Shown: positions 7,492 through 32,080, counted from the first letter of the stretch. The stretch is 64,000 bases of DNA from Rebecca billardiae RCC1528 (GCA_965240325.2 OZ251230.1:2728001-2792000); one strand, 5' to 3'. The notes: generated from the letters alone by a model not told the origin. A program made the numbers and translations.

Positions 7492-10400
7492 TTAGCCGCG
7501 GAAAAGGAAGCGCACCGCCGCCACCGCGGGGCGGAGCCCGTTCGCCAGCGCGCGCGGCGCCGCCGCCAGGCGGATGCTCAGCGATGCGGCCAGAGTGTGC
7601 CCGCTGCTCGCGCCACGCCGGCTGAGCGCGGGCAGCAGCTGCGCGAGCGCGCCGGTCAGGCCCTCCTGCACGACGAGCGAGCTGACAAGCGCCACGCCCC
7701 ACGACGCGAGCATCGCCGCCGTCTGCGCCTCGCCGAGCACGCGCCCGAACACGATGCACAGCGCACAGAGCCCGGCGAACGTGCCCAGCATGGCCGCCCA
7801 CGCCAGGAGCACCCGGCCGCGCTGCGCGGACGGGCTGTGCGCGCAGCTGCCGCCGGAGCTCGCCCAGCGCGCGTCGGCCGCCTTGGCGCGCGCGTACCAC
7901 GCGCACAGCTCGTCGCTGCCCACGTCGAGGGACGCGCCGGCGCGGCCGCGGCCGCTCGCCGCGAGCGTGCGCAGCAGCGCGCGCAGCTCGGGCGCGGTCA
8001 TCGGGTCGCCCAGCTCGGCCGCCAGCAGCTGGAGCGCGCCCACGCCGAGCCGGCGGCGCTTGGTCGAGTCGAAGAGGCGGGCGAGCGCCCGGAGGGCCTG
8101 CGCCTCCGCGTCCGTGAGCTCCGCGCCGCGCGCGCGCCGGGCGGCGGGTCGCTCGGCGGAGGCGCGCGGTGCGCACGCCGGCGAGCGGATCGACCCGGCC
8201 TCCGCGGAGGCGGCGGCGGGGCTGGGAGTGGTGGCGCGCACGGCGCGCGGCGCGCTCGGTAGGAGGAGGCGCAGGTCCGGCCGAGCCGCCGCGCCGGGCG
8301 CGGCTGTCGGCGGCGGAGGTGGCGGCGCGGGCGTGGCCGACGGCGCCGGTGGCACGGCCGGCGTGGGCGCGCCGCAGCGCAGACGCGCACGCGCCGCGAT
8401 GTCGGCCGCGGGCGCTGCGGCGGGCGCGTCGGCGTGCGGGCGCGGGCGCGCGGCGGTCTGCGCAGCGGCGTCCGCGGCTGCGTCCGCGGCCGGCGCGGCG
8501 GTGGCACGCGGCGGCGGCGGCGGCGGCGCAGCAGCCGCCGGAGGCGCGGCGGCGGCGCCACCGCGGCGCGGCGACCGGCTCGGCGTCGTCGCCGCCGACG
8601 CGGCCGCCGAGGAGCGCGTCGGCACCTCCAGCCTCCACTCGTCGGCCGTCATCCGCGCGCTCATGAGGATCGGCGCCGCGATGGCGCGCGGCGGCGTGCG
8701 GCGAGGCGTGGGCTCGGCCGACGCCGCCGCCGCCGCCGCGGCGGGCGCGGGCGCGCTGAGTGCCTCGGCACGCTGCGCGCACGCCGCCAGCGTGGCCAGG
8801 TCCCGTGCGCTCAGCGGCGTGTACCCCGCCTCGCGCGGGCTGCGGCCGAAGCTGCCGCCCGCCTCCGCAGGCAGCCGCAGGGCGAGAGGCGGAGCGGCGC
8901 GCGCGGCCGGCGGCTCTGCGGCGGCCGGCGCTGCCGAGGCCGCCCGCGCCGCCGAGGGCGCACTGGCCGCCGCGCGCGGTTTGGCCGGCCCCGCGCCGGC
9001 GCGCTCGACGCCAGCCGCGCCCGCGAGAGCCTCGTCGTAGGCCTTGATGGCATCGTCAACCTGCACCGCATCGTGGGCCTCGGCGCGCCCCGGGGACGCG
9101 CCAGCGGCGTGCGTCGGCGGATGCGCGCTCGAGGGCGCGCGCACCACCGCCGTCGCCTCCACCGCCGCCGCGCCCGCCATCGGCGCGCACATCGCACGGC
9201 CGGCACTCGCCGCCTCGCTCCCGGCTTCGCGCGCCGCTGCGGCGGCGAGCGGCTGGACCGCCACCGCCGCGTCTGCGCGCTCTGCGCGCTCTGCGTGCGC
9301 GCGTGCACGCTCCGCAGCCTTGGGCCCAGGAGCGGTGGCCGGCCGGCGCGGCCCGCTCGCGCCGGTCGGCACCGCGCACGCGGGCTCCGCCGCCGTGGAC
9401 TCCGCGGCGTCCGCCGCCGTGGACTCGGCGGAGAGCGGCGGCTGAGGGGCGGCGGCCTGGGCGGCGGCTGCGCCGCTGCTGCTCCAGGCGGTGCGCGCCT
9501 CGGCGCCCGCGTCGAGCGGCGCGCTTCGGCGCCGAGCCTGCAGGCGATCGCTCGCTCGGGCGGGCACGGCGCTCGCTGGCAGCGCCGAGCGCGGCGGCAG
9601 TGGCCTGCGCGCAGCCGGCTCGGGCTGGGCCGACGCGCTCGGCTCGGCTCCTGTCGTCGACATGGCGGTGTTGGCGGTGGCGTTGTTGGTGGCGGTGGCG
9701 GCGGTCGGCGGCGTCGGCGGCGGCGGCAGCGGCGGCGGCGGGCGCATCCGGCTCGAGTGCCGCCGCGGAGCTTGCTCGGCCGGGCTGCCCGGCGGGCGCA
9801 CGCGGCTCGAGTTGGGCCTGCGTGGCGGCGGCGGCGAGGCCGGCGGCGTCGCGGGAGGCCAGCCGCTGGGCGAGGGCGGCTGCGCCGGCTCTGGGCTCGT
9901 GCCTGCGCTGCTGCCGGCGCGGCCGAGCGCAAGGCTGGGCGGCGCGCGCGGTGGCTGCGGCCGCGGCGAGCCCTCCGGCGTGGAGCTGCAGCTGCCGCCG
10001 AGCTCGGGCCGACGCCGGAGCGCGAACGTGGCGCGCGCCGAGCGCGGCAGCACGCTGGCGCTGCGCGGCCGGCGCGCGCGGCCGGCGCTGCGCGGCCGCG
10101 TGAGCGGCTCACTGCCGCCGCCGTCTGAGGCGCCCTCCGCGTCCGCGCCCGCGCCCGCGTCCGCGTCCGCGGCCGTATCCGCGCCCGCATCGCAGTCCCC
10201 ATCGCCGTCCGCGCGTGCGGCGGCGCGCGCGGCGGCGGCCTCAGCCATCCGGCGGACGAGCGCGCCCGTGGGCGACTGCAGCGGCGCGACGATGCCGCCG
10301 CCGCTGAGCGTCACCCCCGCCGAGCCGGGCCTGCGCGTGCCCGTGCGCGGCGCGGACGCGGGCCTGTGCGCGCCGGCCCGCTGCTGCGAGCGCACCGGCG

Positions 10401-12175
10401 CCACCCGAGCGGCGCCGGCGCCGAGGGCGGCGGCGGCGGCCGGCGGCAGCGGCGGCGCGCACGGCGGCGCGCGGACGGCGTCGAGGGCGAAGGGCGACGG
10501 CGGCGCGTCCCGCGCGCGGCTCGGCCGGCCGAGCGCGAGCTGCGCGCTGAGCCCGCCCCGCCCCTCCTCCTCCTCCTCCTCCTCCTCCTCCTCCCCCTCT
10601 TCTGCCAGCCACACCTGCCGCGCGCCCACGATGGAGGAGAGCTGCGCGGACGACTCGACGAGGGCGGAGACACGCGCCACGCGCGCGCCGGCCGAGGCGG
10701 GGCGCGTGCCGTCGAGCGTGGCGCGCAGCGCGCGGTAGAAGCGCGCGGGCGGCGAGTCGCGCTCGCCGGCGTGCGCGAGCGCCCACACGCCGCGGCAGAG
10801 CGCGAGCGCGGGCAGCGCCACCGCCGCGGCCGCGGCCGCGTACAGCGCGACAGTGAGCGCGCGCGCCGCGCCGCCCGGCTGTGCGCTCGCGTCGAAGAGC
10901 GCGCACTCGAGCAGCAACTGCACGGCGGCGAGGTTGAAGAGCGTCTGCACCAGCTCGGCCTTGCGCACGCCGCGCGCCGCCGGCGCGAAGAGCAGCACGA
11001 GGAGCGTGTGCTCGTCGAGCAGCCGCTGCAGTAGCAGCAGCGCGCGGCCGCGCGCCGAGCCGGCGCGCGCCGTGCGCTTGAGCGGCGCGCGCGCCGAGGC
11101 CCACATCGAGCCTGGGCGCGCGGCGGGCGGCGCGGCGTCGGCGCGGCGGGGCGGCTCGTGGGCCGAGCGCGCAATCGGCGGCGAGGGCGGCGTCGCGAGC
11201 GGCGACGACCCGTCCGCCGCCGGCACCGCCGAGCCCTCCGCCGCCGCGCTCGCCGCGCCCTCCTCCTCCTCGCGCGCGCGCCGCCGCATCCGCAGCCGCT
11301 GCACGGTCGAGCGGCCGTCTCGGATCTCGGCGGCGACGGAGGTGGGCAAGGGCGTGGCGGCGCTGCCGACGCTCGAGTCGGTCAGCCGGTGCGGCCGCGC
11401 GCCCGCCATCCCGCTCGTCTTCAGCTCCGCCGCATGCCACCGCGCGTACGCGCGCGCCGCGCGCGCGTCCGCGCCGAGCGCGCACGCGAGCGCGAGGCCG
11501 TTCGCGCCCGCGAGCAAGTAGACGAGCCGGTAGATGGTCCGGTTCTCGCGGTGCCCCTCCGCGGGGTCGGCGAGGATCTCGATGGCGTCGGCGGCGCTGA
11601 AGGTGTTCACGCGCACCGCGCCCGCGTCCGCGCGCGCCTCCGCCGCGCTCGCGGGGAAGCCGAGCCCTGCAAAGGTGGTGAGGTGGTCGCACGCGCAGTG
11701 CAGCAGCGAGGGGTCGCGGCCGGGCGGCGCGGGCACGGCCGCGCAGCCGCGGCCGGACCACGCGCGCGCGTCGGCGTCCCAGTAGCGGCACGCGCGCGCG
11801 CGCGAGGGCTCGGCGCTGTAGTGCGGCGGCTCGAGCAGCGGCGGCAGCGCCAGGAGCACAGGCGCGCTCAGCGCGCGCACATCCAACGGGCCGCCGCCCG
11901 TGCCGCCGCCGCCGCCACCCGTGCCGCCCGTGCCGGCTGCGCCGCCAAACAGGTCGACCGACATGATGGCTGTGAGGAAGGGAGCGCCCTGCGCCTCGGC
12001 GAGCATCTCCGCGGCGGCGGCGGCGGCGGCGGTGGCGTTGCCTTCGGCGCGCAGCGCCCACGCCTGCTCGAGGGTGCGCACGGAGACCGCGCTCACCACC
12101 AAGTCCGCCGAGCCCGCGGCGCCGAGCGCAGCCGGCGGCTGCGACGTGAGCGCGCCCGCGGGCACGCGCACGCCC

Positions 12176-12216
<41 letters not shown>

Positions 12217-15200
12217 GAGCTCAATCCACGCCGCGCCGTCGGCAGGCGAGCCGGCGGCACCGGCACCGGGCGGCGCAACGTCCGGCGGCAGCGTGTCCGC
12301 GCGCACGCGCGCCGCCGCGAGCCCCACGGCCGCCCCCGCCAGCCGCACGGGCGCCTCCCCCGGCAGCGCGCCGCTGAGCATTGCCCGCGCCAGCCAGCCC
12401 GCCAGCTGCAGCGCCGCCAGCCCGATCTGGACCGAGTCGGCGGGCGCGACGGCGCTGGTGGCGTTGGCGAGCAGCGCGCGGTCGGCGAGCCGGATGAGCG
12501 CTGCGGCGCTGGGGGCGTCGATGCCCTCGCCGCCCTCGTGCGCGCCGCGCGCCAGCGCCGCCGCCTGCTCGAGCACCGACGCCTGCGCGCCGCCGTCCTC
12601 CGACAGCAGCGCGCCGCGCGCCGCCGCGCCGACCGCCTCGAGCGCGGCCGCGTGCTGCGCGCGCGCTGCCGCGCCGGGGCCGGCGAGCGCGCCGGCCTCG
12701 CGCGTGAGCGCGAGCAGCGCGCCCGCGGGCGGCGCCGCCGACGCGTCGAGCCCCGCCACCGTCGAGACCAGCCGCAGCGCGCCCGGCGCGTCCGTGCGCT
12801 CGAGCGCCGCGCGCGCCCGAGCCAGCAGCGTCGCGGCCAGCGCGCCGCCGTCGTCGGCGTCGCTCGCGCCCGGCGCGACCTCGAGCGCCGCGCTCGCGCG
12901 CGCCTCGGCGCCGCGCGCGTCGGAGACGCGCACGCGCACGCGAAGCCGGCCGGGCGGCAGCACCACGCCCGTGAGCGACGGGCTGTCCGCGCGCGGGCCG
13001 CTCAGAAGCGGCACGGCCGCGCGCGCACCGCCGCCGCCGCCGCCGAGCGCCGCGTCCGCGTGCGCGTGCGCGTGCGCGTACTCAAATGCGTACCGCAGCG
13101 GCAGGTCGTCCGCGTCGTCGTCGGCCCAGCCGCGCGCGCTCAGCGTCAGCTCGGCGCCGAGCTCCACGCGCGCGCCGTCCGCGAGCAAGCCGCCGCCCGC
13201 GTCCGCGCGCACGTCGAGCGCGCCGCCAAACGGCGGGCGGTTGACGCTCACGCGCACGGCCGCGCCGCCCGCCCCCGCCTCGGGCAGCGAGACGTCGGCC
13301 ACGCGCAGCTCGAACACGTACTCGGCGCCGGGCGCGAGCGCGCCGCTTCGGAACGCGAGGGCGCGCGAGGCGCCGCCCGTCGTCGTGACCGACGCCGTGT
13401 CGCTCAGGTTGAGCGGCGCGGGCGCGAGCGCGCCGCCCGCGCCCACGAGCCACGCGCGCCACTCGAAAGCATACGCGCCGCCGCCGCCGCCCGCCGCCGC
13501 CGCCGCCGTCGGCTCGCGCGCCTCGATCGCCAGCCGCTCGGTGGGGAGGCGCCAGCTGGGGTTGTACACGGTGCGCGGCAGCGGCAGCAGCGCCACGCCG
13601 GGCGGCGAGCCCGCCGCCACCTCCACCGCCATCGTCGCGCTCGACTCCGCCGCCTCCGCCGCCGCGCCGCCCGGCCGCGCGACGCGCACGCGCACGGAGT
13701 ACGCGCCGGCCGGGAGCGCGCGCGCGGGGATGGTGAGCACGCCCGCGGGGGAGGCCGTGGCGTTGGGCGGGAGCGGCAGCGCCGAGCCCGCGCCCAGCCC
13801 GCCACCGCCACCAGCGCCCTCGTCCCGCCGCAGCAGCAGCCACTCGAACGCCAGCAGCGCCGCCTGCGCGCGCTCGGCCGCGCCGCCCTCACGGCCTGCC
13901 GAAGGGTCGTAGCTGGCGGACGCGTCGGCGACGACGGGCTCGTCCGCGCCGAACGTGCGCGCGTCGGCGGCGAGCACGGCGACGGGCGGCGCGCGGCGCA
14001 CCGCGATCGTCGCGCGCGCGCTCGAGCGCGCGCCCGGCTCGTCCGCCATGCTGGCCAGCACCTCGAGCTCGTAGGCAAAGCCGGCGCGCAGCGCGTGCGC
14101 CGGCAGAGCCAGCCGCGCGCCGCGCGCGAGCGCGCGCGCGCTCAGGTCGGGCAGCGGCGCGGGCGCGGCGGCGGCGGCGGGCGCGTCGAGCGGCGTCGCG
14201 CCGAGCACGCGCCAGCTCAGCACCACGCGCTCGCCGCGCGCCGCGGGCCAGCACGGCGGCAGCTGCTGCACGCGCGCCGAGAGCTCAAGCGGCCGGTCGG
14301 CGCGCACGGCGCCGGCGGGCGTGCCGAGCAGCGCCACGCTGGGCGCCGGCGTGCGCGCGCGCCGCACCTCGGCCCACGCGAGCTCGGAGGGCACGCCGAG
14401 GAAGGAGGTGACGCGCAGCGCGACCACGTACCCTCGCGCGGACGTGGCGGCGGGCAGCTCGCCCACGCGCACGCTCGACGCGGACGGCGGCAGCGCGCGC
14501 AGCGCGGCCTCGACGCGCGCCGCGCCCGCGCCCGCCGCGCCGCCGTCGAGCCCCCAGCTGTACGAGGGCGGCACGACGCCGCCGGCGCTCGACGCGGTGC
14601 CGTCGAAGGCGAGCGACTCGTTGGCGCACGGCGAGAGCGCCGCGGGCGCGCGCAGCACCGCCACGGGCGTCGGGCACGGCGCGTCGCCGCACGGCGCGTC
14701 CGGGTCGACGGTGGCGGATGCGGCCTCGTTGCCCGCGAGCGCAGCGGCGGCGCACGCGGCCCACGCGCACGCCGCGGGCCGCACCGCGCCCGCGCGCACG
14801 CCGACGCGCATGCCGGGCGCGGCGTGCGTGTCCGCGCTCAGCCGCACGGCGAGCGTCGAGTCGTCCCGCCAGTAGCACCGCGCCCACGCCGCCGCCGCCG
14901 CCTCGGTGTCTGCGTCCTCTGCAGGGGGCGCGTCCGCGCCCGCGCCCGCGCCGTCCGCACCGTCTGCGGCCGCGTCGCCGCGCAGCAGCGCGAGCGTCTC
15001 GTCGTCGAGCAGCGGCGCGCACGGGCCGAGGCCGCCGCCCATACCCGCGCGGTCGGTCGGCTGCGCGTCGAAGCGCAGCAGCAGCGCCGCGCCGCTCGCC
15101 GGGTCAAAGTGCGCACCCTCGAGCGCGGGCGCGTGCGGCGAGGGCTCAAAGGAGAAGCGCACCGCGCCCGGCCCGCCCGGCGTGCGCGGCGACCACTGCT

Positions 15201-15547
15201 GCCCGTTGAGCGAGACGAAGAGCTGCACGGCGCGCGAGCCGGCGGCGCCGTCCGCGCTGCCGTTCGCCCCCGGCGCGAAGTGCGTCGCCCGCTGCAGCAG
15301 CACGCCGTGCGCGGCCGAGGCCGAGAGCGGTGGCTCGGCTCGCGCGCGCCCAAACGCGACGCGCACGGCCGCGCCGCCGAGGAGCGAGCCGGCGCCCGCC
15401 AGCTGGATGAGCGTGGTGGTGCGCGCCATGCCGCGCGCGGGCGTGACCGACAGCACGCGCAACGCCGCGTCGTCGTAGTACCGGAACGAGACGGCCGCCG
15501 ACGCCGTGCGGCCGACGATGACGCCCGCCGCGCCGCCGCCGCCATTG

Positions 15548-15590
<43 letters not shown>

Positions 15591-18500
15591 GCTCCTCCGC
15601 CCGCACGCCGAGCTCGAGCGCGAGCGGCCCGGCCGCGCTGCCCGGCGGCAGCACGCAGCGCGCGCGGCTCGTGCCGTTCAGCGCGCGCAGCAGCTCGGCG
15701 CGCGCGGCGCACGCCTCGCCGCTGTGCTCGGGCAGCAAGCAGCACAGCGCGGAGCCGGCCGCGGCGGCGAGCTCAAAGCCTGCGCCGCTCAGCGTGACGA
15801 CGGTGCCGCCGGACAGAGGGCCGGAGTCGGGCTCGACGGCGGCCAGCGAGACGTCGGCGGCGAAGTCGAAGAGGCGCAGCGAGGGCGGGCCGAACAGCGC
15901 CGGCACGACCGCCCCGCCCGCGCCGGGCGCGCCCAGCCACAGCGAGAGCACGTACTCGCCCGCGCCGAGCGCGGCGCCGGCCGCGCCGCCGGCCGCGGCC
16001 GCCCCGCACGCCCACTGGCCGAGCGGCAGCGCGCACGCCGCCGCCTCCTCGTGCAGCAGCGTGCCGTTGAGCGTGAGCAGCGGCGCCGAGGCGCCGCTCT
16101 GTATGCGCGCGGCCGTCGTCGGCTCGCCCCGCGGCCCCGCCGCCGCGTGCAGCGTGCACGCCACCCGCTCGGACGCGCCCGCGTCCGCGACAAAGCCGCG
16201 GCCGGCCACGGTGAGCGTGGTGGTGGTGGTGGGCGCGGCCGACCCGTCCGCGCACGCCAGCCGCCGCCGCGCAGCGCCGCCCTCGCCGTCCGCGCGCGGG
16301 CCGAGCGGGACGGTGCTGGGCGAGAGGCCGAGGACGAGGGCGCGCAGCAGCGGCGGCGGCGGCGGCGGCGGCGCGGACGGCGGCGCGGACGGCGGCAGGC
16401 TCGGCGGAGACGGCGGCGGGAAGGGCTCGGCGCGCGGCGGCGGCGGAGGGCGCGGCGGCGGGCGGGGCGGCGCGCGCGGCGGCGGCGAGGGCGGAGGGCT
16501 CGGCGGCGGCGCGGGCGGCGGGCTCGGCGGTGGGCTCGGCGGCGGCGCGGGCGGCGCGCGCGGCGGCGGCGACGGCGGAGGGCGCGGCGGCGGCGAGGGC
16601 GGTGGGCTCGGCGGCGCGGGCGGCGGGAAGGGCTCGGTGCGCGGCGGCGGCGGCGGCCGCGGCGGCGCGCTCGGTGGCGGCTGCGGCGGCCGCGGCGGCG
16701 GCCGCGACGGCGGCGGGCTGGGAGGCGGCGACGGCGGAGCACGCGGCTGGGGCGACGGCGGCGGGCTCGGCGGCGGGCTGGGAGGCGGCGACGGCGGCGG
16801 GGATGGTGGCCGTGGCGGAGGGAACGGCTCGGTGCGCGGCGGAGGCGGTGGCAGCGGTGGCGGGCGCGGCGGCGGGCGCGACGGCGGCTGGCGAGGCGGG
16901 CTCGGGGGCGGGCTCGGGGGTGGAGCCGGCGGCGGCAACGGCGCGGGGCCCGGCGGCGGCGCGGGCACGAGCGCAGGCGGTGGAGACGGCGGAGGGCTTG
17001 GAGGCGGGCTCGGCGGAGACGCCGGCGGTGGGGACGGCGGCGGACTGGGCGGCGGGTGCGGCGGAGGCGAGGGCGGCGGCCTTGGTGGCGGCGCGGGGGG
17101 GGGCGAGGGCGGCAGGCTCGGCGGTGGCAACGGAGGCGGCGAGGGCGGCGGGCTCGGAGGCGGCGAGGGCGGCGGGCTCGGCGGCGGCGAGGGCGGCGGG
17201 CTCGGCGGCGGGCTCGGCGGTGGGCTCGGTGGCGGCGACGGTGGTGGGCTTGGCGGCGGAGACGGTGGCGGCGAGGGCGGTGGGCTCGGCGGCGGGCTCG
17301 GCGGCGGCGACGGCGGCGGGCTCGGCGGTGGCGAAGGCGGCGGCGAGGGCGGTGGGCTTGGAGGCGGCGAGGGCGGCGGACTCGGCGGCGGTGAGGGCGG
17401 CGGGCTGGGTGGTGGGCTTGGCGGCGGGCTCGGCGGCGGGCTCGGCGGTGGCGACGGTGGCGGGCTCGGCGGCGGGCTCGGCGGCGGCGAGGGCGGAGGG
17501 CTTGGCGGTGGCGATGGCGGCGGCGACGGTGGCGGACTCGGCGGCGGGCTCGGTGGCGGGTTCGGCGGCGGGCTCGGCGGCGGAGAGGGCGGCGGGCTCG
17601 GAGGGGGCGAGGGCGGTGGGCTCGGCGGTGGCGATGGTGGCGGCGACGGTGGTGGGCTCGGAGGCGGCGAGGGCGGTGGGCTCGGCGGCGGGGACGGCGG
17701 CGGCGAGGGCGGCGGGCTTGGCGGCGGGGACGGCGGTGGGGATGGCGGTGGGCTTGGTGGTGGGCTCGGCGGCGGGCTGGGTGGTGGAGACGGCGGCGGG
17801 CTCGGCGGCGGCGAGGGCGGCGGGCTTGGCGGCGGAGACGGTGGCGGCGAGGGCGGTGGGCTCGGCGGCGGGCTCGGCGGCGGCGACGGCGGTGGGCTCG
17901 GCGGTGGCGACGGTGGCGGCGAGGGGGGTGGGCTCGGCGGCGGCGAGGGCGGTGGGCTCGGCGGCGGGGACGGCGGCGGGGACGGCGGCGGGCTCGGCGG
18001 CGGCGACGGCGGCGGGCTCGGCGGCGGGCTTGGCGGCGGCGAGGGCGGCGGGCTCGGCGGCGGCGAGGGCGGCGGGCTTGGGGGCGGGCTCGGTGGCGGC
18101 GACGGCGGCGGGCTCGGCGGCGGGCTTGGCGGCGGCGAGGGCGGCGGGCTTGGCGGCGGGCTCGGCGGGGGCGACGGCGGTGGGCTCGGCGGCGGTGATG
18201 GTGGCGGGCTCGGCGGTGGCGACGGCGGTGGGCTCGGCGGCGGCGAGGGCGGCGGGGACGGCGGTGGGCTCGGGGGCGGGCTCGGAGGCGGGCTCGGTGG
18301 TGGGCTCGGCGGCGGCGAGGGCGGCGGGCTTGGCGGCGGGCTCGGCGGGGGCGACGGTGGCGGCGACGGTGGTGGGCTCGGCGGCGGCGAAGGTGGCGGG
18401 CTTGGCGGCGGCGAGGGCGGCGGGGACGGCGGTGGGCTCGGGGGCCGGCTCGGAGGCGGGCTCGGTGGTGGGCTCGGCGGCGGCGAGGGCGGCGGGCTTG

Positions 18501-21500
18501 GCGGCGGGCTCGGCGGGGGCGACGGTGGCGGCGACGGTGGTGGGCTCGGCGGCGGCGAAGGTGGCGGGCTTGGCGGCGGGCTCGGCGGCGGCGAAGGTGG
18601 CGGGCTTGGCGGCGGGCTCGGCGGCGGGCTTGGCGGCGGCGAGGGCGGCGGGCTCGGCGGCGGGCTCGGCGGGGGCGACGGCGGTGGGCTCGGCGGCGGC
18701 GAGGGCGGCGGGGACGGCGGTGGGCTCGGGGGCGGGCTCGGAGGCGGGCTCGGCGGTCGGCTCGGCGGCGGCGAGGGCGGCGGGCTTGGTGGCGGCGACG
18801 GTGGTGGGCTCGGCGGCGGCGAAGGCGGCGGGCTCGGCGGCGGCGAGGGCGGCGGGCTCGGCGGCGGCGAGGGCGGTGGGCTCGGCGGCGGGCTCGGCGG
18901 CGGCGAGGGCGGCGGGCTCGGCGGCGGCGAGGGCGGCGGGCTTGGGGGCGGGCTTGGGGGCGGGCTTGGCGGCGGGGACGGCGGCGGCGACGGCGGCGGG
19001 CTCGGCGGCGGGGACGGCGGTGGGCTCGGTGGCGGGCTCGGCGGCGGGCTCGGTGGCGGACTTGGCGGCGGGCTTGGCGGAGGCGATGGCGGTGGACTCG
19101 GCGGTGGCGACGGTGGCGGGCTCGGCGGCGGGCTCGGCGGCGGGCTCGGTGGCGGACTTGGCGGCGGGCTTGGCGGAGGCGATGGCGGTGGACTCGGCGG
19201 TGGCGACGGTGGCAGCGATGGTGGTGGGCTAGGCGGCGGCGAAGGAGGAGGGCTTGGCGGCGGCGACGGCGGCGGCGACGGTGGCGGGCTCGGCGGAGGG
19301 CTTGGTGGTGGAGACGGTGGCGGGCTTGGCGGCGGGGACGGCGGCGGGCTCGGAGGCGGGCTCGGCGGCGGGCTGGGCGGTGGGAACGGTGGCGGCGATG
19401 GTGGCGGGCTTGGCGGCGGCGACGGCGGTGGGCTTGGCGGTGGCGAGGGCGGTGGCGACGGCGGCGGGCTCGGTGGCGGCAGCGGTGGAGGGCTTGGTGG
19501 CGGTGACGGCGGTGGACTCGGCGGTGGTGACGGTGGTGGATTCGGTGGTGGCGAAGGCGGCGGGCTCGGGGGCGGGCTGGGCGGCGGGCTCGGCGGCGGG
19601 CTTGGAGGCGGCGAGGGCGGTGGGCTCGGCGGCGGCGACGGAGGAGGGCTCGGCGGCGGCGATGGTGGCGGCGAAGGCGGTGGCCTAGGCGGCGGACTTG
19701 GCGGCGGGGAGGGCGGGGGTGAGGGTGGCGGGCTGGGTGGCGGGCTGGGCGGCGGCAAAGGCGGTGGCGACGGCGGCGGGCTCGGCGGCGGCGATGGCGG
19801 CGGGCTTGGCGGCGGGCTCGGCGGTGGGCTCGGCGGCGGCGGCGACGGTGGCGGCGAGGGCGGCGGTGAGGGCGGCGGCGAGGGCGGCGGGCTCGGCGGC
19901 GGTGAGGGTGGCGGCGACGGCGGCGGTGAGGGCGGCGGGCTTGGCGGCGGCAAAGGCGGCGGGCTCGGCGGCGGGCTCGGCGGCGGGCTCGGCGGCGGCG
20001 GGCTCGGCGGTGGCGAGGGCGGCGGCGAGGGCGGCGGCGACGGTGGTGGCGAGGGCGGCGGGCTGGGCGGTGGCGATGGCGGCGGACTTGGCGGCGGGCT
20101 CGGCGGCAGGCTCGGAGGCGGGCTGGGCGGTGGGCTGGGCGGCGGAGAGGGCGGTGGCGGGCTCGGCGGCGGCGACGGCGGCGGGCTCGGCGGTGGCGAC
20201 GGCGGCGGGCTCGGCGGCGGCGAAGGCGGCGGGCTCGGCGGCGGCGAAGGCGGTGGGCTCGGCGGCGGCGGCGACGGTGGCGGCGAGGGCGGCGGTGAGG
20301 GCGGCGGCGAGGGCGGCGGGCTCGGCGGCGGCGAGGGTGGCGGCGACGGCGGCGGTGAGGGCGGCGGGCTTGGCGGCGGCGAAGGCGGCGGGATCGGCGG
20401 CGGGCTCGGCGGCGGGCTCGGCGGCGGCGGGCTCGGCGGTGGCGAGGGCGGCGGCGAGGGCGGCGGCGACGGTGGTGGCGAGGGCGGCGGGCTAGGCGGT
20501 GGCGACGGCGGCGGACTTGGCGGCGGGCTCGGAGGCGGGCTCGGAGGCGGGCTGGGCGGTGGGCTGGGCGGCGGAGAGGGCGGTGGCGGGCTCGGCGGCG
20601 GCGACGGCGGCGGGCTCGGCGGTGGCGACGGCGGCGGGCTCGGCGGCGGTGATGGCGGCGGGCTTGGCGGCGGGCTCGGCGGTGGGCTCGGCGGCGGTGG
20701 CGACGGTGGCGGCGAGGGCGGCGGTGAGGGCGGCGGCGAGGGCGGCGGGCTCGGCGGGGGCGAGGGTGGCGGCGAAGGCGGCGGTGAGGGCGGCGGGCTT
20801 GGCGGCGGCGAAGGCGGCGGGCTCGGCGGCGGGCTCGGCGGTGGGCTCGGCGGCGGCGGGCTCGGCGGTGGCGACGGCGGCGGCGAGGGCGGCGGCGACG
20901 GTGGTGGCGAGGGCGGCGGGCTCGGCGGGGGCGACGGCGGCGGACTTGGCGGCGGGCTCGGAGGCGGGCTCGGAGGCGGGCTGGGCGGTGGGCTCGGCGG
21001 CGTAGAGGGCGGTGGCGGGCTCGGCGGTGGCGACGGCGGCGGGCTCGGCGGCGGCGACGGCGGCGGGCTCGGCGGCGGGCTCGGCGGTGGGCTCGGCGGC
21101 GGGCTCGGCGGCGGGCTCGGCGGCGGCGGCGACGGTGGCGGCGACGGCGGCGGTGAGGGTGGCGGCGAGGGCGGTGGGCTCGGCGGGGGCAAGGGTGGCG
21201 GCGAGGGCGGCGGTGAGGGCGGCGGGCTCGGCGGTGGCGACGGCGGCGGCAACGGCGGCGGGCTCGGCGGCGGGCTCGGCGGCGGCGGGCTCGGCGGTGG
21301 CGACGGCGGTGGCGAGGGCGGCGGCGAGGGCGGCGGGGAGGGCGGCGGACTCGGCGGTGGCGACGGTGGCGGGCTTGGCGGCGGGCTCGGCGGCGGCGGG
21401 CTCGGTGGTGGGCTCGGCGGCGGGCTCGGCGGCGGCGAGGGCGGCGGGCTTGGCGGCGGCGAGGGCGGTGGGCTTGGAGGCGGGCTGGGGGGTGGGCTTG

Positions 21501-24500
21501 GTGGCGGGCTCGGTGGCGGGCGTGGCGGCGGTGATGGCGGCGGGCTCGGCGGCGGCGGGCTTGGCGGCGGGGACGGTGGCGGGCTCGGCGGTGGCGATGG
21601 TGGCGGCGATGGCGGCGGGGACGGCGGAGGCGACGGCGGCGGGCTTGGTGGCGGGCTCGGCGGGGGCGGGCTCGGCGGCGGGCTCGGCGGCGGTGAGGGT
21701 GGTGGGCTTGGCGGCGGGCGTGGTGGCGGGCTCGGCGGCGGGCTTGGCGGTGGCGATGGTGGCGGGCTTGGCGGTGGCGACGGCGGTGGTGAGGGCGGAG
21801 GGCTTGGCGGCGGCGATGGTGGCGGTGGGCTCGGCGGCGGGCTCGGCGGCGGGCTCGGCGGTGGCGACGGTGGCGGGCTTGGCGGCGGGCTAGGCGGCGG
21901 GCTCGGCGGTGGCGAAGGTGGTGGCGCGGGCGGCGGCGGGCTCGGCGGTGGCGATGGCGGCGGTGAGGGCGGTGGCGACGGTGGCGGCGACGGCGGCGGC
22001 GACGGCGGCGGCGACGGCGGCGGCGACGGTGGCGGGCTCGGTGGCGGCGGGCTCGGCGGGGGCGAGGGCGGTGGCGAGGGCGGCGGGCTGGGCGGCGGCG
22101 AGGGCGGCGGCGAGGGCGGCGGGCTCGGAGGTGGCCTGGGTGGCGGTGACGGCGGTGGTGATGGCGGAGGCGATGGTGGCGGGCTCGGTGGCGGTGAGGG
22201 CGGCGGGCTCGGCGGCGGGCTCGGTGGTGGCGACGGGGGCGGGCTCGGCGGTGGTGACGGCGGCGGGGAGGGCGGAGGGCTTGGTGGCGGCGATGGCGGT
22301 GGTGGGCTCGGCGGCGGGCTCGGCGGTGGTGACGGCGGCGGGCTCGGCGGCGGGCTTGGCGGAGGCGACGGTGGTGGGCTCGGCGGTGGCGATGGAGGCG
22401 GCGAGGGTGGCGGTGACGGCGGAGGCGATGGCGGCGGGCTTGGAGGCGGGCTTGGCGGGGGCGGGCTCGGCGGTGGGCTCGGCGGCGGGCTCGGCGGCGG
22501 GCTTGGCGGCGGTGAGGGCGGCGGGCTCGGCGGCGGGCTCGGCGGTGGCGACGGGGGCGGGCTCGGCGGTGGGGAGGGCGGTGGGGAGGGCGGAGGGCTC
22601 GGTGGTGGGCTGGGCGGCAGTGGGCTCGGGGGCGGGCTCGGCGGTGGCGACGGCGGCGGGCTCGGCGGCGGGCTTGGCGGTGGCGACGGTGGTGGGCTCG
22701 GCGGTGGCGATGGAGGCGGCGAGGGTGGCGGTGACGGCGGAGGCGATGGCGGCGGGCTTGGAGGCGGGCTTGGCGGGGGCGGGCTCGGCGGTGGGCTCGG
22801 CGGCGGTGAAGGCGGCGGGCCTGGCGGCGGTGAGGGCGGCGGGCTCGGCGGTGGACTTGGTGGTGGCGACGGTGGCGGGCCCGGCGGCGGTGACGGTGGT
22901 GGCGAGGGCGGAGGGCTCGGTGGTGGCGACGGAGGTGGGGACGGGGGCGGCGGGCTCGGAGGTGGGCTCGGCGGCGGCAAGGGCGGCGGGCTTGGCGGCG
23001 GGCTTGGCGGCGGCGGGCTCGGGGGCGGGCTTGGCGGTGGCGACGGTGGCGGGATCGGAGGTGGGCTCGGCGGTGGCGAGGGCGGTCGAGACGGCGGCGG
23101 ACTCGGCGGCGGGCTGGGAGGCGGCGGACTGGGCGGCGGGCTCGGCGGAGGCGAGGGTGGCGGGCTGGGCGGCGGGCTCGGTGGTGGACTGGGCGGCGGG
23201 CTCGGCGGCGGGCTCGGCGGCGGGCTGGGAGGCGGCGGGCTCGGCGGCGGGCTCGGCGGCGGGCTCGGCGGCGGGCTCGGCGGCGGCGACGGCGGCGGGC
23301 TTGGCGGTGGGCGAGGCGGCGGGCTCGGAGGCGGCGATGGTGGCGGGCTGGGCGGCGGTGACGGCGGCGGTGACGGCGGCGGCGGGCTCGGTGGCGGGCT
23401 CGGTGGCGGCGAGGGCGGCGGCGAGGGCGGCGGCGAGGGCGGCGGGCTCGGTGGCGAGCTCGGTGGCGGGCTCGGCGGTGGGCGCGGAGGCGGCGGACTG
23501 GGCGGTGGGCTCGGCGGAGGCGACGGCGGTGGGCTTGGCGGTGGCGAGGGCGGCGGGCTGGGCGGTGGGCTCGGCGGCGGGCTCGGCGGCGGCGATGGTG
23601 GCGGGCTGGGCGGTGGCGACGGCGGCGGTGAGGGCGGCGGTGACGGCGGCGGTGGCGAGGGGGGCGGGCTTGGAGGCGGCGAGGGCGGCGGCGACGGCGG
23701 TGGGCTCGGAGGCGGCGAGGGCGGTGGCGAGGGCGGCGGCGAAGGCGGCGGGCTCGGCGGAGGGCTCGGCGGCGGGCTTGGCGGCGGGCTCGGCGGCGGC
23801 GGGCTGGGCGGCGGGCTCGGCGGGGGCGAGGGCGGCGGGCTTGGCGGCGGGGAGGGCGGCGGAGGCGAGGGCGGCGGCGTGGGCGGCGGCGGCGACGGCG
23901 GCGGCGACGGCGGCGGCGGCGACGGCGGCGGCGAGGGCGGCGGCGACGGCGGCTGCGGCGGCAGGATCTCGACCGGCGGCAGCGCATCGCCCATCGAGCC
24001 GGATGCGAAGCCGATGTTGTCGGGGCTCCCCTGCCCCAGCTCGCCGTGCGAGTCCTCGCCCCAGCTGCGTGGCGTTGGCACACGGCGGGGCGGGGCGGCA
24101 AGGCGCGGGGGCGAGGGGCCGTGAGGCGCGGCGCGGCGCGGGGCGCGCACGTGCGCGGCTGTGCCGGCCGCAGCCGTCTCCACGCGCGGCGCGGCGGCAC
24201 GGCGGCGCGCTGCGCCGGCTGGCGCGCATCGACGCGCCTCCACTCCCGCAGCGCGGGCCAGCCAAGTCCTGCCCTAGCCCTGCCCTAGCCCTGCCCAGGC
24301 GCGGCACGCACGCGCAGCCCGCCACCGCGCCGCCGCGCGTGCCGGGCGGCGGTGCGCGCACCACTTGACGGTGCCGTCGTCGAGCAGCGCGCACACCGAC
24401 CTGTCGAGCGTGTCGAACGCGGCCACGGTGCGCCCCGAGCCCAGCGGGACGGTGGGCAGCGAGGCGCCCATCTCGCCGCTGTTGTCGCCGCGGTAGCTCG

Positions 24501-26168
24501 TGTCCTCGTACCCGAGCTGGCCGACGTTGTTGCCGCCCCAGCTGCGGGCGGGCGGGCGCGCGGCGGGCGCGCGGGCGGGTCGGCGGGTGCACGGCTCGGC
24601 GCTGGGCGGCGCGCCGTTTGGCCGCCGCTGCCGAAGCGGGCGCGCCCGGGCGAGGGCGCAGCGTGTGCGCGCACCACTTCATGGCGCCGGTGTTGAGCCG
24701 CGCACACGTGCTGATGGAGCCGGGCTGCACCTCGAGTGCGCTGAGGCCCCAGCCGAGGTCGACGTCGGGCAGCGCGTCGCCCATCCCGCCCGAGCCCCCG
24801 CGATCCGCCACGTCGCCGTACCCGAGCCGTCCGTTCACCGCCTCGCCCCAGCACTTCACCTTGCCGCCGCTGTGCAGCAGGCACGTGTGCAGCTCGCTCA
24901 AGCTCACGTCGAGCAGGCTCGCCGCCGCCACGCCCACGTCGACGAACGGCAGCTTGTCGCCCATCTCGGCGGCCGTGCCGCCGCGGCTGACCGTGTCGCC
25001 GTACCCCAGCTGGCCGTTCGTGTTCTGGCCCCAGCTGCGCCGCGCGGCGGATCAGGAGAAGAGTTGAAGAAGCCGACGAGCAGGCGGCGGGAGGCACCGG
25101 CGGAGGGAGGGCACGCGCGTCAGCCCGTGCGCCGCACGCCGAGCGGTTCGCGAGGCCTCGGGCGCGCCCACGCCGCGCGGTGGTGCACACGGCCGGCGCG
25201 CTCGCACTCGGCGCGCTGCCCGGCCGGCCAGCCAGCCAGCGCGCGCGTGCGCGCACGCACCACTTGAGTCCCTCCGCCAGCACGACGCAGTTGTGGTAGA
25301 AGCGCGAGCTCAGCTTGAGCACGGCGTGCGGCGCGGCGTTGCCGTCCGTGCCGAGGTCGAGGTAGGGCAGCGCGTCGCCCAGAGTCGAGGGGACATCGCC
25401 GCGCTCGGAGCCGTCGCCGTACCCCAGCTCCTCCTCACCGTTGTCGCCGAAGCACTTGAGCCTGTCGGTCTGTGAGACCAACACGCACGTGTGCCGCCTG
25501 CCGCAGCTCACGGCCTTGGCGGTGAGGCCGGCGCCGAGGTTGACGGCGACGAGCGCGTTGCCCATCTCGCCGGGGTCGTCGCCGATGTCCGACGTCGTGC
25601 CGGTGCCACACCGCCCGTACCCTGCGTCGCCCCAGCTGCGAGCGCGCGGGCGGGTGGCGGGTGCGTGGCGCCACGTGAGCGGCAGCGCGCAGTAGCGCGC
25701 GCGACAGCACGGCGCTCGGCGCGCGGCGCGCACGCACCACCGCAGCGTGCTGTCCGAGAGGATGGCGCAGTTGTGGTACGCGCCGACGGAGAGCTGCGTG
25801 GCGGTGAGGCCGCTCGGGAGCTCGACGTACGGCAGCGCCAGGCCGAGCTCGCCCGGGCCGTCCCCGCGGTTGGACGCGTCTCCGGTGCCGATCGCCCCCC
25901 ACTCCGCCTCGCCCCAGCACTTCACCTTGCCCGTGTCCGTGAGCACGCACGCGTGGTAGAGGCCCACCTTCACCGCGGTGATGGTCTGGGCGCGCGCGAG
26001 CGCGGGGCCGAGGGGCGGGGCGGAGGCGGCGTGCTCTGGGCCGTCGAGGATCCCCAGTCGAGTGAGGAGATGCCGCGGCATGTGATTCGCGCCCATCGCC
26101 GCCAGCACGACGAGCGTGGAGAGGGCTCGCCGCGCTGGCGAGCAGCGGGTACTCGTGGTCCTCGCCAT
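7492..26168 (-). CDS. Giant (~5,970 aa) RCC1-extensin-IPT/TIG-REJ-GPS multi-pass membrane protein, polycystin-1-like, paralogue B
   Basis: ATG at 26168. Exons 26168-25738, 25635-25261, 25034-24675, 24541-24362 and 24064-7492 sum to 17,919 nt in frame. Motifs: RCC1-like repeats; SP3/SP4 rod; AVEPDSGPLSGGTVVTLSGAGF (IPT/TIG); NRPPFGG...ARGWADDDADDLPLRYAFEY (REJ-like); CRYWD...WSGRGC...CACDHLTTF (GPS); five hydrophobic segments downstream. Further in-frame introns in the last exon cannot be excluded. Confidence 0.85.
16350..23950 (-). repeat. Coding proline-rich array (~2,500 codons): mixed SP3/SP4 zone, pure SP3 zone, degenerate Arg/Ala-containing zone
   Basis: Seen directly in the translation of ORF 7492..24243; includes a 429-bp higher-order repeat at about 19841-21300. 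Confidence 0.95.
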
Positions 26169-30438: not shown

Positions 30439-30576
30439 CGTCGTCGCCGCAACAGACGCTTCGCCAGTGCTGCGCGCGCCCAAAGCGCGACGCCGAGGAG
30501 CCAGAGCGAGCGACGCCCCGCCTCATCAAGCGCGCAGCACACAGCGACGGCCGCCGTGGCCACGTCACAGCGAACC

Positions 30577-31332: not shown

Positions 31333-32080
31333 GGCGGCCGGCGCGGGCTCGATCCCGTCAGGCCCGTCGAAGCAGGCGTTCGCTCGAATGTAGTGATGTT
31401 ATATATATATATTATTACTAGGCGCGCGCTACGACTACATCCGCGCGCGATCCAGCGCGCGGCGGCGCCAGCAGCATATATCATCATATACCCGGTACCG
31501 CCTAAGCGCGTGACTCTGCGGCATATACTACCGGACTGATCGCCACTCCGCGCCGCCGCGGATCGGCGGCTGACGGCCTGACCGGATTAGAATTTATTAT
31601 TTAGATGCGCTGCTGCCTGACTCGGCGGATCTGCGCGCTGATGAGTCATCAGTCATCATCATCAGATCGACGATCCGACTCCGACTCCCGAGCTCCGAGT
31701 CCGGACACGCCACACGGTGGTCGCCAGGTCGGTGCCCGAGACAAACGGCTGCTGACTCAGCAGACTCGTCCGAGAGCCGGCGGCGTAGTACTACTACTAG
31801 TAGAGTGAGTCGTAGTAGTCCGCCGTCATCCGAGAGTGGCATCCTGGAGAGTCCCGGCGTCAGCCAGTAGACGACGCATACCGAGTCCGCCTGCTGCTGA
31901 CGTACGTACATAGATAATCCGCGTCGTCAGGCCCAGAGCGCTTGGATGCTGATGGCAACGTACTTCGTCGCAGCTGCGGCTTGGTGATTCATCAGCGCGA
32001 TATATATCCGCCGTGATGATCCGAGAGGAAACTCGTCATCGCCAACGACTGATCGGCGCCGCACTACGGACGACGCGTGG

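What the first reader, a model, noticed from the sequence alone, without database searches (positions are those of the whole stretch)
7492..26168. Giant polycystin-1-like receptor holding an RCC1 propeller on a sub-micron extensin stalk
Seen: one spliced frame of about 5,970 aa running RCC1-like repeats, ~2,500 aa of SP3/SP4, IPT/TIG-like domains, a REJ-like module, a GPS motif and five TM segments. Known: REJ+GAIN/GPS is the polycystin-1/PKDREJ ectodomain. SP3-4 repeats typify plant and green-algal hydroxyproline-rich glycoproteins, which form polyproline-II rods of about 0.31 nm per residue. Inference: a rod up to about 0.75-0.8 micrometres projects a binding head from the cell, like the head-and-shaft Chlamydomonas agglutinins, but is wired to a cleavable, possibly mechanosensitive membrane module. 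A second copy lies in tandem. I do not know this architecture from the literature.
Basis: partly seen in the sequence, partly recalled or inferred. Interest (0 to 1): 0.9.

Follow-up and report, generated by a model that had tools for sequence, protein, structure and literature searches.

The report
Giant stalked half-polycystin-1 surface protein
A very GC-rich alga, probably a pavlovophyte haptophyte and not a green alga, has two tandem genes that each appear to encode a ~6,000-residue surface protein: an RCC1 propeller on a ~0.8-micrometre Ser-Pro-Pro-Pro rod, anchored by the self-cleaving front half of a polycystin-1-type receptor that lacks the ion-channel half. I could obtain no expression data.

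Summary
On the minus strand, 26168-7492, five exons give a 5,972-aa protein. It has a signal-peptide-like N-terminus and seven RCC1 repeats. A 2,537-aa stalk follows, 98.7% Ser/Pro over its purest 2,265 aa and mostly exact SPPP. Then come three TIG-like domains, REJ (Pfam E 1e-22), a GAIN domain with an intact GPS (C-x-C-x-HLT), and five TM helices with a degenerate EF-hand pair in the third loop. There is no PLAT and no channel domain.

A second copy lies in tandem; its head is 94-96% identical. The interpretation needs correcting in two ways. The best homologues are haptophyte (Diacronema lutheri, Pavlovales sp.), not green-algal. The membrane part corresponds only to TM1-TM5 of polycystin-1 (best structural match 8z6b_A residues 3063-3610, Z 13.2, on a homologue's model).

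New here: four public short-read contigs carrying family bases, from two read sets, all begin with an in-frame, stop-free Ser/Pro-rich sequence that runs to the contig end. So stalk plus base is a family layout that gene callers cut short.

No RNA or long-read evidence was obtainable, so function is inferred. This scan has already noted many paralogues elsewhere in the same genome. The closest published analogue is Chlamydomonas MST3.

The parts
7492..26168 (-). Whole gene, copy 1: ATG at 26168, stop at 7494-7492; 5 exons; 5,972 aa
   Evidence: Intergenic GC falls to 0.64 downstream, at 6242-7491.
25738..26168 (-). Exon 1: signal-peptide-like N-terminus (basic n-region, then the hydrophobic stretch ALSTLVVLAAMGA) and the first RCC1 repeats
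   Evidence: Sequence read; Pfam RCC1_2/RCC1; 424/431 identical to copy 2 with no indel.
25261..25635 (-). Exon 2: RCC1 repeats
   Evidence: GT-AG phase-2 intron boundaries inside the Cys codon of the K-C-W-G motif; 368/375 identical to copy 2 with no indel.
24675..25034 (-). Exon 3: RCC1 repeats
24362..24541 (-). Exon 4: one RCC1 repeat
7492..24064 (-). Exon 5 (16,573 nt): last RCC1 repeat, stalk, TIG, REJ, GAIN/GPS, 5 TM. Further introns in 8224-10023 cannot be excluded.
   Evidence: Continuous ORF; codon-position GC profile.
16351..23961 (-). Ser-Pro stalk, ORF aa 95-2631 (2,537 aa): mostly SPPP with some SPPPP. The proximal end has three PPPPPR(T/A)EPFPPP modules.
   Evidence: The same end motif occurs in relative L004.
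15139..16227 (-). Three TIG/IPT-like domains
   Evidence: Pfam TIG 23 bits. This region plus the pre-REJ stretch aligns collinearly with P0002 TIGs and pre-REJ: 31% identity over 670 aa, E 5e-56.
12841..14136 (-). REJ domain
   Evidence: Pfam PF02010, E 1.4e-22, 80 bits.
11644..12876 (-). GAIN domain (helical subdomain plus beta-sandwich). GPS core at 11671-11790; the HLT codons lie at the high end of 11665-11685.
   Evidence: Pfam GPS. An AF2 model of this stretch matches BAI3, BAI2, CELSR1 and latrophilin GAIN domains; Foldseek E 1.3e-7 to 7e-6. All four Cys and both Trp of the GPS pattern are present.
11470..11535 (-). TM1
10777..10953 (-). TM2 and TM3 hairpin
8224..10023 (-). Low-complexity Ala/Pro/Arg-rich part of the TM3-TM4 loop. 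The coding signal is weaker here.
   Evidence: GC3 0.86-0.92 and GC2 0.74-0.85, against 0.92-0.99 and 0.55-0.75 elsewhere. Relatives also have loops of 230-1,050 aa.
7894..8118 (-). Degenerate EF-hand-like pair
   Evidence: Aligns with the EF-hand pair of D. lutheri KAG8462819.1. Ca2+-ligand positions are replaced. No Pfam EF-hand hit.
7633..7812 (-). TM4 and TM5 hairpin, then about 46 aa to the stop
1..6241 (-). Tandem copy 2 (partial): RCC1 head, and a stalk that runs off the window start

Best explanation
This is one real gene, with a near-identical tandem neighbour, for a giant multi-pass surface glycoprotein of a pavlovophyte-like alga. A signal peptide sends the N-terminus outside. A seven-bladed RCC1-type propeller serves as the distal binding head. 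About 2,540 residues of SPPP form an extended polyproline-II rod of up to about 0.8 micrometre. Three Ig-like TIG domains, REJ and GAIN sit next to the membrane. The GAIN domain probably cleaves itself at HL|T, leaving head and rod held non-covalently on a five-helix anchor folded like TM1-TM5 of polycystin-1. Pull or ligand binding at the head would load the GAIN domain. That would either shed the rod or expose the conserved post-cleavage peptide to the five-helix bundle and its cytoplasmic loops. There is no channel half, so any ion flux would need a separate partner. Shown here: the domains, their order, their frame and the family layout. Inferred: glycosylation, cleavage, location and signalling.
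For: Gene and frame: ORF and splice model. Exons 1-4 have 0 indels between the two copies, against 104 gap columns in the introns. GC3 is 0.92-0.99. The repeat is conserved at protein level with third-position and AGY/TCN Ser codon variation.

Domains: RCC1, REJ, GPS and TIG by Pfam. The GAIN fold is seen in a model of this protein's own sequence.

Anchor: homologues share the spacing GPS-TM1-(130-210 aa)-TM2/3-(long loop with EF-hand)-TM4/5. The tail of this protein aligns with D. lutheri KAG8462819.1 at E 9e-12. The model of that homologue's module has as its best match, among 48,161 PDB representatives, polycystin-1 8z6b_A residues 3063-3610: Z 13.2, rmsd 4.8 A, 192 aligned residues.

Family layout: four independent short-read contigs from two read sets show an in-frame Ser/Pro-rich run directly upstream of TIG-REJ-GPS bases. 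One of them shares the PPPPPRTEPFPPP end motif.

Other support: a relative is present as a single MMETSP transcript spanning REJ to TM5. PPII helices can span hundreds of nanometres (PMC11015965).
Against: No RNA or long-read data: no sequencing run was listed, so neither transcription, nor the 16.6-kb exon, nor the assembly across 7.6 kb of repeat is verified. The 5-TM fold match comes from a homologue's model at mean pLDDT 67. By the tool's own note, Z 13 is borderline for helical bundles, and Foldseek found only the EF-hand. The loop at 8224-10023 has a weak coding signal. The two copies' head exons differ by 14 synonymous and 15 non-synonymous codons, which is not strong purifying selection. 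Proline hydroxylation or glycosylation of such repeats has not, to my knowledge, been reported in haptophytes. The EF-hand pair of this copy looks inactive.
Confidence: 0.6

Rival explanations
1. It is mainly a structural surface fibril: a flagellar or cell-body hair, or a glycocalyx component of an alga without a cell wall. REJ-GAIN-5TM would be only a membrane socket, and GPS cleavage a way to shed or renew hairs. No signalling is involved.
For: The rod length (about 0.8 micrometre) is similar to that of Chlamydomonas mastigonemes, whose core protein MST3 is a PPII filament rooted in a polycystin-family membrane domain (PMC11015965). The EF-hand pair is degenerate in this copy. There are many paralogues with different heads (scan notes; unverified). 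From my own knowledge, pavlovophytes bear fine hairs on the long flagellum.
Against: Specific, interchangeable globular heads (RCC1 here; LRR and FG-GAP in paralogues, per the scan notes) suggest ligand binding rather than bulk coat. The post-cleavage peptide and the 5-TM motifs are conserved across the family, which a passive anchor would not require.
Confidence: 0.22
2. It is a gamete or cell-cell recognition adhesin, like the head-and-shaft sexual agglutinins of Chlamydomonas and the REJ receptors of sea-urchin sperm. Fast-evolving heads would set partner specificity.
For: REJ/GPS proteins act in fertilisation in sea urchins, and one is a male-gamete-specific, positively selected candidate in Ectocarpus (PMC4700764). 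The head exons of the two copies show about equal synonymous and non-synonymous differences. The gene is tandemly duplicated.
Against: To my knowledge no sexual cycle is documented for these algae. There are no expression data. The family is very large for a mating function.
Confidence: 0.08
3. It is an artefact. The long ORF joins separate genes (a secreted RCC1-SP protein and a REJ-GPS membrane protein), or crosses a mis-assembled or non-coding GC-rich satellite that happens to stay open.
For: In DNA of 80-87% GC several frames stay open over the repeat. No reads could be laid. Short-read assemblies break in these repeats.
Against: Both flanks are in the same frame as the SPPP reading. Variation sits at third positions and both Ser codon families are used. 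The tandem copy has the same head-to-stalk junction. Four other contigs show the stalk-to-base junction in frame. The base has no signal peptide or start of its own directly after the stalk.
Confidence: 0.1

Closest known systems
Polycystin-1 / PKD1-like / PKDREJ / sea-urchin REJ receptors
   Same: A REJ domain followed by GAIN/GPS with HLT, directly before TM1. The TM1-(about 190 aa)-TM2/3-(long loop)-TM4/5 spacing is shared. A homologue's model matches PC1 residues 3063-3610.
   Different: No PLAT domain in loop 1. No C-terminal 6-TM TRP-like half or coiled coil. No PKD, LRR or C-type lectin ectodomain. An EF-hand(-like) pair sits in loop 3. It has a giant Ser-Pro stalk and an RCC1 head.
Chlamydomonas MST3 and the other SIP-completed partial-PKD2 proteins (PMC11015965)
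   Same: A very long proline-rich extracellular filament is covalently continuous with a five-helix polycystin-family membrane domain. Heads vary (LRR, SRCR, SEA and others) across a paralogue set.
   Different: The MST3 anchor is a PKD2-type S2-S6 pore domain lacking S1. Here the anchor is PC1 TM1-TM5-like, the TM4-TM5 loop (about 8 aa between the annotated helices) is too short for a pore loop, and REJ/GAIN lie in front of it. The lineage also differs: chlorophyte versus haptophyte.
Uncharacterised pavlovophyte family: Diacronema lutheri KAG8462819.1 ('EF-hand domain-containing protein') and Pavlovales sp. CCMP2436 KAJ1635852.1 / KAJ1633484.1 ('REJ domain-containing protein')
   Same: TIG-REJ-GPS-5TM with an EF-hand pair before TM4. 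Identity is 34-38% over REJ-GAIN and 30% over the tail.
   Different: The annotated members are about 2,000 aa, with neither stalk nor head. P0001 in D. lutheri has no Ser-Pro stalk upstream, only short Pro-Leu/Pro-Ala dipeptide repeats on the opposite strand. Their EF-hands are canonical.
Adhesion GPCRs (latrophilin, BAI, CELSR)
   Same: GAIN domain with an autoproteolysis motif next to the membrane, below a long adhesive ectodomain. The GAIN model's best structural matches are these proteins.
   Different: The membrane part is not a 7-TM secretin-like GPCR.
Plant extensins and volvocine HRGP shafts (sexual agglutinins, pherophorins); cited from my own knowledge
   Same: SP3/SP4 repeats and a head-on-a-rod design.
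   Different: No Tyr cross-link motifs (no Tyr in the stalk). It is an integral membrane protein. The lineage is probably haptophyte. Hydroxylation is untested.
Bacterial secreted RCC1-repeat propellers (RCC1_2 type)
   Same: The head's best database hits are RCC1 proteins of Sorangium, Polyangium and metagenomes, at 35-41% identity.
   Different: That search was limited by length and word index, so no claim of gene transfer can be made.

Membership tests
Polycystin-1 family (PKD1, PKD1L1-3, PKDREJ) | REJ domain | tested here: met
   PF02010, E 1.4e-22, 80 bits.
Polycystin-1 family (PKD1, PKD1L1-3, PKDREJ) | GAIN domain with a GPS HL|T site directly before TM1 | tested here: met
   PF01825 at 26-28.8 bits. 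The model matches GAIN structures at E 1e-7. Cleavage itself was not tested.
Polycystin-1 family (PKD1, PKD1L1-3, PKDREJ) | PLAT domain in the first cytoplasmic loop | tested here: not met
   No PLAT hit at E <= 1. In the homologue's model, part of this loop is disordered and the rest is helical, with no beta-sandwich.
Polycystin-1 family (PKD1, PKD1L1-3, PKDREJ) | Eleven TM helices, with a C-terminal 6-TM TRP-like (PKD_channel) half | tested here: not met
   Five TM helices. The stop codon comes about 46 aa after TM5. No PKD_channel hit.
Polycystin-1 family (PKD1, PKD1L1-3, PKDREJ) | N-terminal TM1-TM5 bundle fold | tested here: inconclusive
   The top match of a homologue's model is PC1 residues 3063-3610, Z 13.2. 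However, mean pLDDT is 67, Z is borderline for helical bundles, and the model is not of this protein itself.
MST3-type partial PKD2 proteins | S2-S6 with a pore loop between the last two helices, plus a TOP domain | tested here: not met
   The TM4-TM5 loop is about 8 aa between the annotated helices. No PKD_channel hit. The fold match is to PC1 TM1-5.
Adhesion GPCR | 7-TM secretin-like domain after GAIN | tested here: not met
   Five TM helices; no 7tm_2 hit.
Extensin / HRGP | Ser-Pro(3-5) repeats | tested here: met
   518 of 560 Pro runs are exactly 3 residues and 31 are 4.
Extensin / HRGP | Tyr cross-linking motifs | tested here: not met
   Tyr is absent from the ten commonest residues of the 2,545-aa SP-rich region, the rarest of which occurs 3 times. 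None is visible in the translated stalk.
Extensin / HRGP | Prolyl hydroxylation and O-glycosylation | not testable with these tools
   Needs biochemistry.
RCC1-like domain | Seven repeats of about 50-60 aa forming a propeller | tested here: met
   RCC1_2, RCC1 and RLD Pfam hits. The spliced head has seven C-[WF]-G repeats. The fold itself was not modelled.
Pavlovophyte TIG-REJ-GPS-5TM-EF family | Collinear homology from TIG to TM5 | tested here: met

The most novel reading that the evidence does not exclude
This would be a family of micrometre-long tension sensors. Interchangeable binding heads on stiff polyproline rods pull on a GAIN domain. Rupture at the GPS site would then activate a stand-alone polycystin-1 front half, with no TRPP channel subunit in the same chain. 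That would make the REJ-GAIN-5TM unit an ancient, self-sufficient signalling module. It would also make these haptophyte proteins the simplest natural system in which to study how polycystin-1 senses force.
Probability: 0.2. Interest if true: 0.85.

Novelty: new variant of a known kind. Interest (0 to 1): 0.65.

Why it matters
Polycystin-1 is mutated in the commonest inherited kidney disease, and what its ectodomain and first five helices do is still debated. Here that front half (REJ, GAIN/GPS, TM1-5) exists on its own, conserved across a protist family. It is attached to an extreme lever: a rod hundreds of times longer than the base, tipped with a binding propeller. If the protein is expressed, it gives a natural test case for two questions. 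One is whether the front half signals without a channel half. The other is whether GAIN cleavage serves force sensing or shedding. It would also extend extensin-like Ser-Pro rods to haptophytes, and it shows that public gene calls systematically truncate such proteins at the repeat.

Tried and rejected
(1) Expression and assembly check by reads. The look-up of sequencing runs listed no run, so read laying could not be used.

(2) Green-algal origin. Rejected: the best homologues and a neighbouring thioredoxin-like gene point to Pavlovales.

(3) MST3-like partial PKD2 pore as the anchor. Rejected on loop lengths, the lack of a PKD_channel hit and the PC1 TM1-5 match.

(4) Foldseek (PDB) and Atlas shape searches of the TM-module model returned only EF-hand matches. 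The PDB sequence searches returned only Gly-linker and EF-hand hits plus weak GAIN hits.

(5) Word-indexed search with the D. lutheri TM module found only one further paralogue.

(6) Motif scan for extra introns in the tail. GTGCGY...CAG candidates are too frequent by chance to decide.

(7) None of the 150 library representatives has a long Pro-rich run inside the called protein. The stalks only appeared when I read the DNA upstream of the calls.

(8) The D. lutheri locus of KAG8462819.1 shows no Ser-Pro stalk upstream, so not every family member is stalked.
Full report
OBSERVATION. The window is extremely GC-rich: 67-87% per 2-kb bin. On the minus strand an ORF of 5,583 codons runs from 24243 to 7492. 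ORF length alone means little here, because several frames stay open across the repeat, so I looked for frame-specific signals.

Upstream of the ORF, RCC1-type repeats are spread over three reading frames. Reading the sequence shows four canonical GT-AG introns. All are phase 2, and all split the Cys codon of the K-C-W-G motif that ends an RCC1 repeat. The model is exon 1 26168-25738, exon 2 25635-25261, exon 3 25034-24675, exon 4 24541-24362 and exon 5 24064-7492.

The N-terminus has basic residues followed by a 13-residue hydrophobic stretch, like a signal peptide. The spliced head has seven C-[WF]-G repeats, which implies a seven-bladed propeller.

THE STALK. ORF residues 95-2631 (window 23961-16351) are Ser/Pro-rich.
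- Over the purest 2,265 residues, 98.7% are Ser or Pro, and 518 of 560 Pro runs are exactly three residues long.
- At DNA level the 12-nt unit is only 66-71% conserved.
- Variation is concentrated at codon position 3: entropy 1.54 bits, against 0.63 at position 2.
- Ser is encoded by both AGY (294) and TCN (244) codons.

This is what selection on the SPPP protein repeat would produce, and not what a DNA satellite would. The stalk has no Tyr. Its membrane-proximal end changes into three PPPPPR(T/A)EPFPPP modules. At 0.31 nm per residue for a polyproline-II helix (established value), 2,537 residues give about 0.79 micrometre. The cryo-EM study of MST3 shows that single glycosylated PPII helices can span hundreds of nanometres (PMC11015965).

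THE BASE. After the stalk, Pfam finds TIG (23 bits when the piece is scanned alone), REJ (E 1.4e-22) and GPS (26-28.8 bits; cutoff 22.5). The 670 residues after the stalk align collinearly with three TIG domains and the pre-REJ region of relative P0002, at E 5e-56.

The GPS has the full pattern C-x2-W-x6-W-x4-C...C-x-C-x-H-L-T. An AlphaFold2 model of this protein's own residues 3790-4270 (mean pLDDT 68) shows a helical subdomain plus a beta-sandwich. Its best Foldseek matches are GAIN domains of BAI3, BAI2, CELSR1, latrophilin, CD97 and GPR126, with E from 1.3e-7 to 8.5e-5.

Five hydrophobic helices follow: TM1 at 11535-11470, TM2/3 at 10953-10777 and TM4/5 at 7812-7633. The stop codon comes about 46 residues after TM5. 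No PLAT, PKD_channel or 7-TM family is detected.

CODING SIGNAL. GC3 is 0.92-0.99, against GC2 of 0.55-0.75, from the end of the stalk to ORF residue 4740 and again from 5341 to the stop. The four head introns are flat at about 0.83. Between residues 4741 and 5340 (window 10023-8224), an Ala/Pro/Arg-rich part of the TM3-TM4 loop, the signal is weaker, so an intron there cannot be excluded. This does not change the architecture. Both flanks are in frame and homologous to relatives, and relatives have loops of 230-1,050 residues, including one known from a transcriptome.

TANDEM COPY. Window 6241-3810 is 94-96% identical to 26174-23807. An SPPP frame, in frame with the last RCC1 repeat, stays open from 4288 to the window start, a run of 1,429 aa. 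Between the copies, exons 1-4 differ by 23 substitutions and no indel in 1,346 nt. The introns carry 104 gap columns, which supports the exon-intron model. The stalk arrays are only 78-88% alike and are not collinear, so the repeats turn over faster than the heads.

WHOSE GENE. A full HMMER scan of 1.8 billion representatives with the REJ-GAIN-TM region gave 201 hits. The best named ones are Diacronema lutheri KAG8462819.1 and Pavlovales sp. CCMP2436 KAJ1635852.1 and KAJ1633484.1, at 34-38% identity, plus an MMETSP transcript. A neighbouring thioredoxin-like gene (30577-31329, plus strand) has D. lutheri as its best named hit, at 57%. D. lutheri has a 73% GC genome, described as among the highest in eukaryotes (PMC8379373). 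The source is therefore most likely a pavlovophyte haptophyte, not a green alga. More distant REJ-GPS-TM relatives occur in Phytophthora and Cymbomonas.

THE ANCHOR. Relatives share one plan: TIG, REJ, GPS, TM1, a 130-210-aa loop, a TM2/3 hairpin, a long loop ending in an EF-hand pair, then a TM4/5 hairpin.

The tail of this protein aligns with the EF-hand pair and TM4/5 of the D. lutheri protein at 30% over 200 aa, E 9e-12. Its two loops have lost the Ca2+-ligand positions: for example, D-S-T-K-R-R-R stands where relatives have D-x-D-x-S-G. Pfam finds no EF-hand.

I modelled the module of the D. lutheri homologue, because this protein's own module exceeds the size limit. The model has mean pLDDT 67, with the TM helices at 80-95. 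Aligned against 48,161 PDB representatives, its best match is polycystin-1 in the PC1/PC2 complex: 8z6b_A residues 3063-3610, which is TM1-TM5. The scores are Z 13.2, rmsd 4.8 A and 192 aligned residues.

The tool warns that Z near 13 is borderline for helical bundles, and Foldseek saw only the EF-hand. I therefore treat the fold match as supportive and not proven. Taken together with REJ and GAIN directly in front, and with the same loop spacing, it makes 'front half of polycystin-1' the best description.

NEW COMPARATIVE EVIDENCE. The database proteins of this family show no long Pro-rich run. I fetched the DNA around four of them, and the picture changed. The contigs were:
- L004, L005 and L007, from read set SRR30664515.
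- L006, from ERR14847148. This read set also holds window 30162-33481 at 100% identity.

Each contig begins with a stop-free Pro/Ser-rich frame (Pro 49-69%, Ser 6-22%) of 576, 222, 280 and 36 residues. In each case it is in frame with the called start codon and runs to the contig end. L005 is pure SPPP. L004 ends with PPPPPRTEPFPPP, the same motif that ends the stalk here.

So the stalk-to-base junction is seen in four further independent assemblies, from at least two read sets. Short-read contigs break in the repeat, and gene callers start at the first Met after it. That explains why the layout is invisible in protein databases. Not all members are stalked: the D. lutheri locus of KAG8462819.1 has no such run upstream.

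HOW IT LIKELY WORKS. Shown: a secretory-type N-terminus, an RCC1 propeller, the rod, and TIG-REJ-GAIN next to a five-helix anchor. Inferred: the head binds a ligand or surface far from the cell, the rod transmits pull, and the GAIN domain cleaves at HL|T as in polycystin-1 and adhesion GPCRs. Either the ectodomain is then shed, or the conserved post-cleavage peptide acts on the helix bundle. That peptide has T, F, P and N invariant in the 18 aligned relatives. Because there is no channel half, any ion flux needs a partner.

I put 0.6 on this overall picture. Within it, the architecture is far better supported than the signalling. The rivals are a purely structural hair or coat protein (0.22), a gamete or cell-recognition adhesin (0.08), and an assembly or annotation artefact (0.10).

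COMPARISON WITH WHAT IS KNOWN. It is not a polycystin-1 orthologue, because the PLAT and channel-half tests fail. It is not an adhesion GPCR, having no 7-TM domain. It is not an MST3-type partial PKD2, having no pore hairpin. It is extensin-like only in its repeat.

The nearest published idea is MST3 and its seven relatives in Chlamydomonas: proline-rich filaments with varied heads, rooted in a polycystin-family membrane domain (PMC11015965). REJ/GPS proteins outside animals have been noted in Ectocarpus (PMC4700764). Full-text searches for REJ with haptophyte, and for polycystin-1 with GAIN and protist, found nothing. The search for polyproline stalks in haptophytes listed papers, but none describes this layout.

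The head's nearest hits are bacterial RCC1 proteins at 35-41% identity. That search was limited by length and word index, so I draw no conclusion about its origin.

EARLIER NOTES OF THIS SCAN. Notes on the same genome list many paralogues with RCC1, LRR, FG-GAP or lectin heads on Ser-Pro stalks over REJ/GPS/5-TM bases. Several follow-up reports reached the same reading. I reached the haptophyte assignment and the half-polycystin reading from my own searches before seeing those reports. They are not independent evidence. One note mentions a TRPP-type channel elsewhere in the genome; I did not test it.

LIMITS. No sequencing run was listed for this stretch, so I could lay no reads. Transcription, the single 16.6-kb exon, the repeat length, glycosylation, cleavage and localisation are all untested.

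VERDICT. This is a new variant of known kinds: a polycystin-1-like REJ/GAIN receptor base combined with a proline rod. Interest 0.65.

Noticed in passing
window 16351-16900 (minus); L004:1500-1730: The membrane-proximal end of the stalk carries three PPPPPR(T/A)EPFPPP modules. The same motif ends the stalk of a relative (37% identical over its matched stretches) from another read set. It may be a conserved hinge, processing site or glycosylation signal.
   Followed up: partly
L004:2-1729, L005:2-667, L006:2-109, L007:2-841: Public short-read contigs carrying family bases all start inside an in-frame Pro/Ser-rich run (Pro 49-69%). Assemblers break in the repeat and gene callers start at the first Met after it, so database proteins of this family are N-terminally truncated.
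   Followed up: yes
window 24065-25737 (introns of the head): All four head introns are phase 2 and sit at the same place in the RCC1 repeat, inside the Cys codon of K-C-W-G. Donors are GTGCG(T/C)GC and acceptors CGCAG. This suggests the propeller grew by exon duplication.
   Followed up: partly
window 1-4072 versus 16300-24064: The stalk arrays of the two tandem copies are only 78-88% alike and are offset by about 1 kb, while the heads are 94-96% identical. The repeats seem to expand, contract or recombine quickly.
   Followed up: partly
window 8224-10023 (minus): The Ala/Pro/Arg-rich part of the TM3-TM4 loop has a weaker codon-position GC signal than the rest of the gene. It could be a fast-evolving disordered loop, or it could hide an in-frame intron.
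   Followed up: partly
window 30577-31329 (plus): A thioredoxin-like protein with a signal-like N-terminus. Its best named relative is in Diacronema lutheri (57% identity). Contigs identical to the window are present in read sets ERR14847148 and ERR14847151.
   Followed up: partly
window 15506-24124 (plus) and 15789-24200 (minus, other frame): ORFs of 2,872 and 2,803 aa read the same repeat as Gly-rich or Arg-rich proteins. They are by-products of the GC-rich repeat, not genes.
   Followed up: yes
window 23965-26168 (head exons): The nearest database relatives of the RCC1 head are bacterial RCC1-repeat proteins (Sorangium, Polyangium and metagenomes) at 35-41% identity. Its origin is unresolved, because the search was limited by length and word index.
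   Followed up: no
L005:668-9833: In the relative from SRR30664515, the base is called as two genes: TIG-REJ-GPS, and then an EF-hand gene about 2 kb downstream. Probably one gene has been split by an intron or a frame change in the long loop.
   Followed up: no
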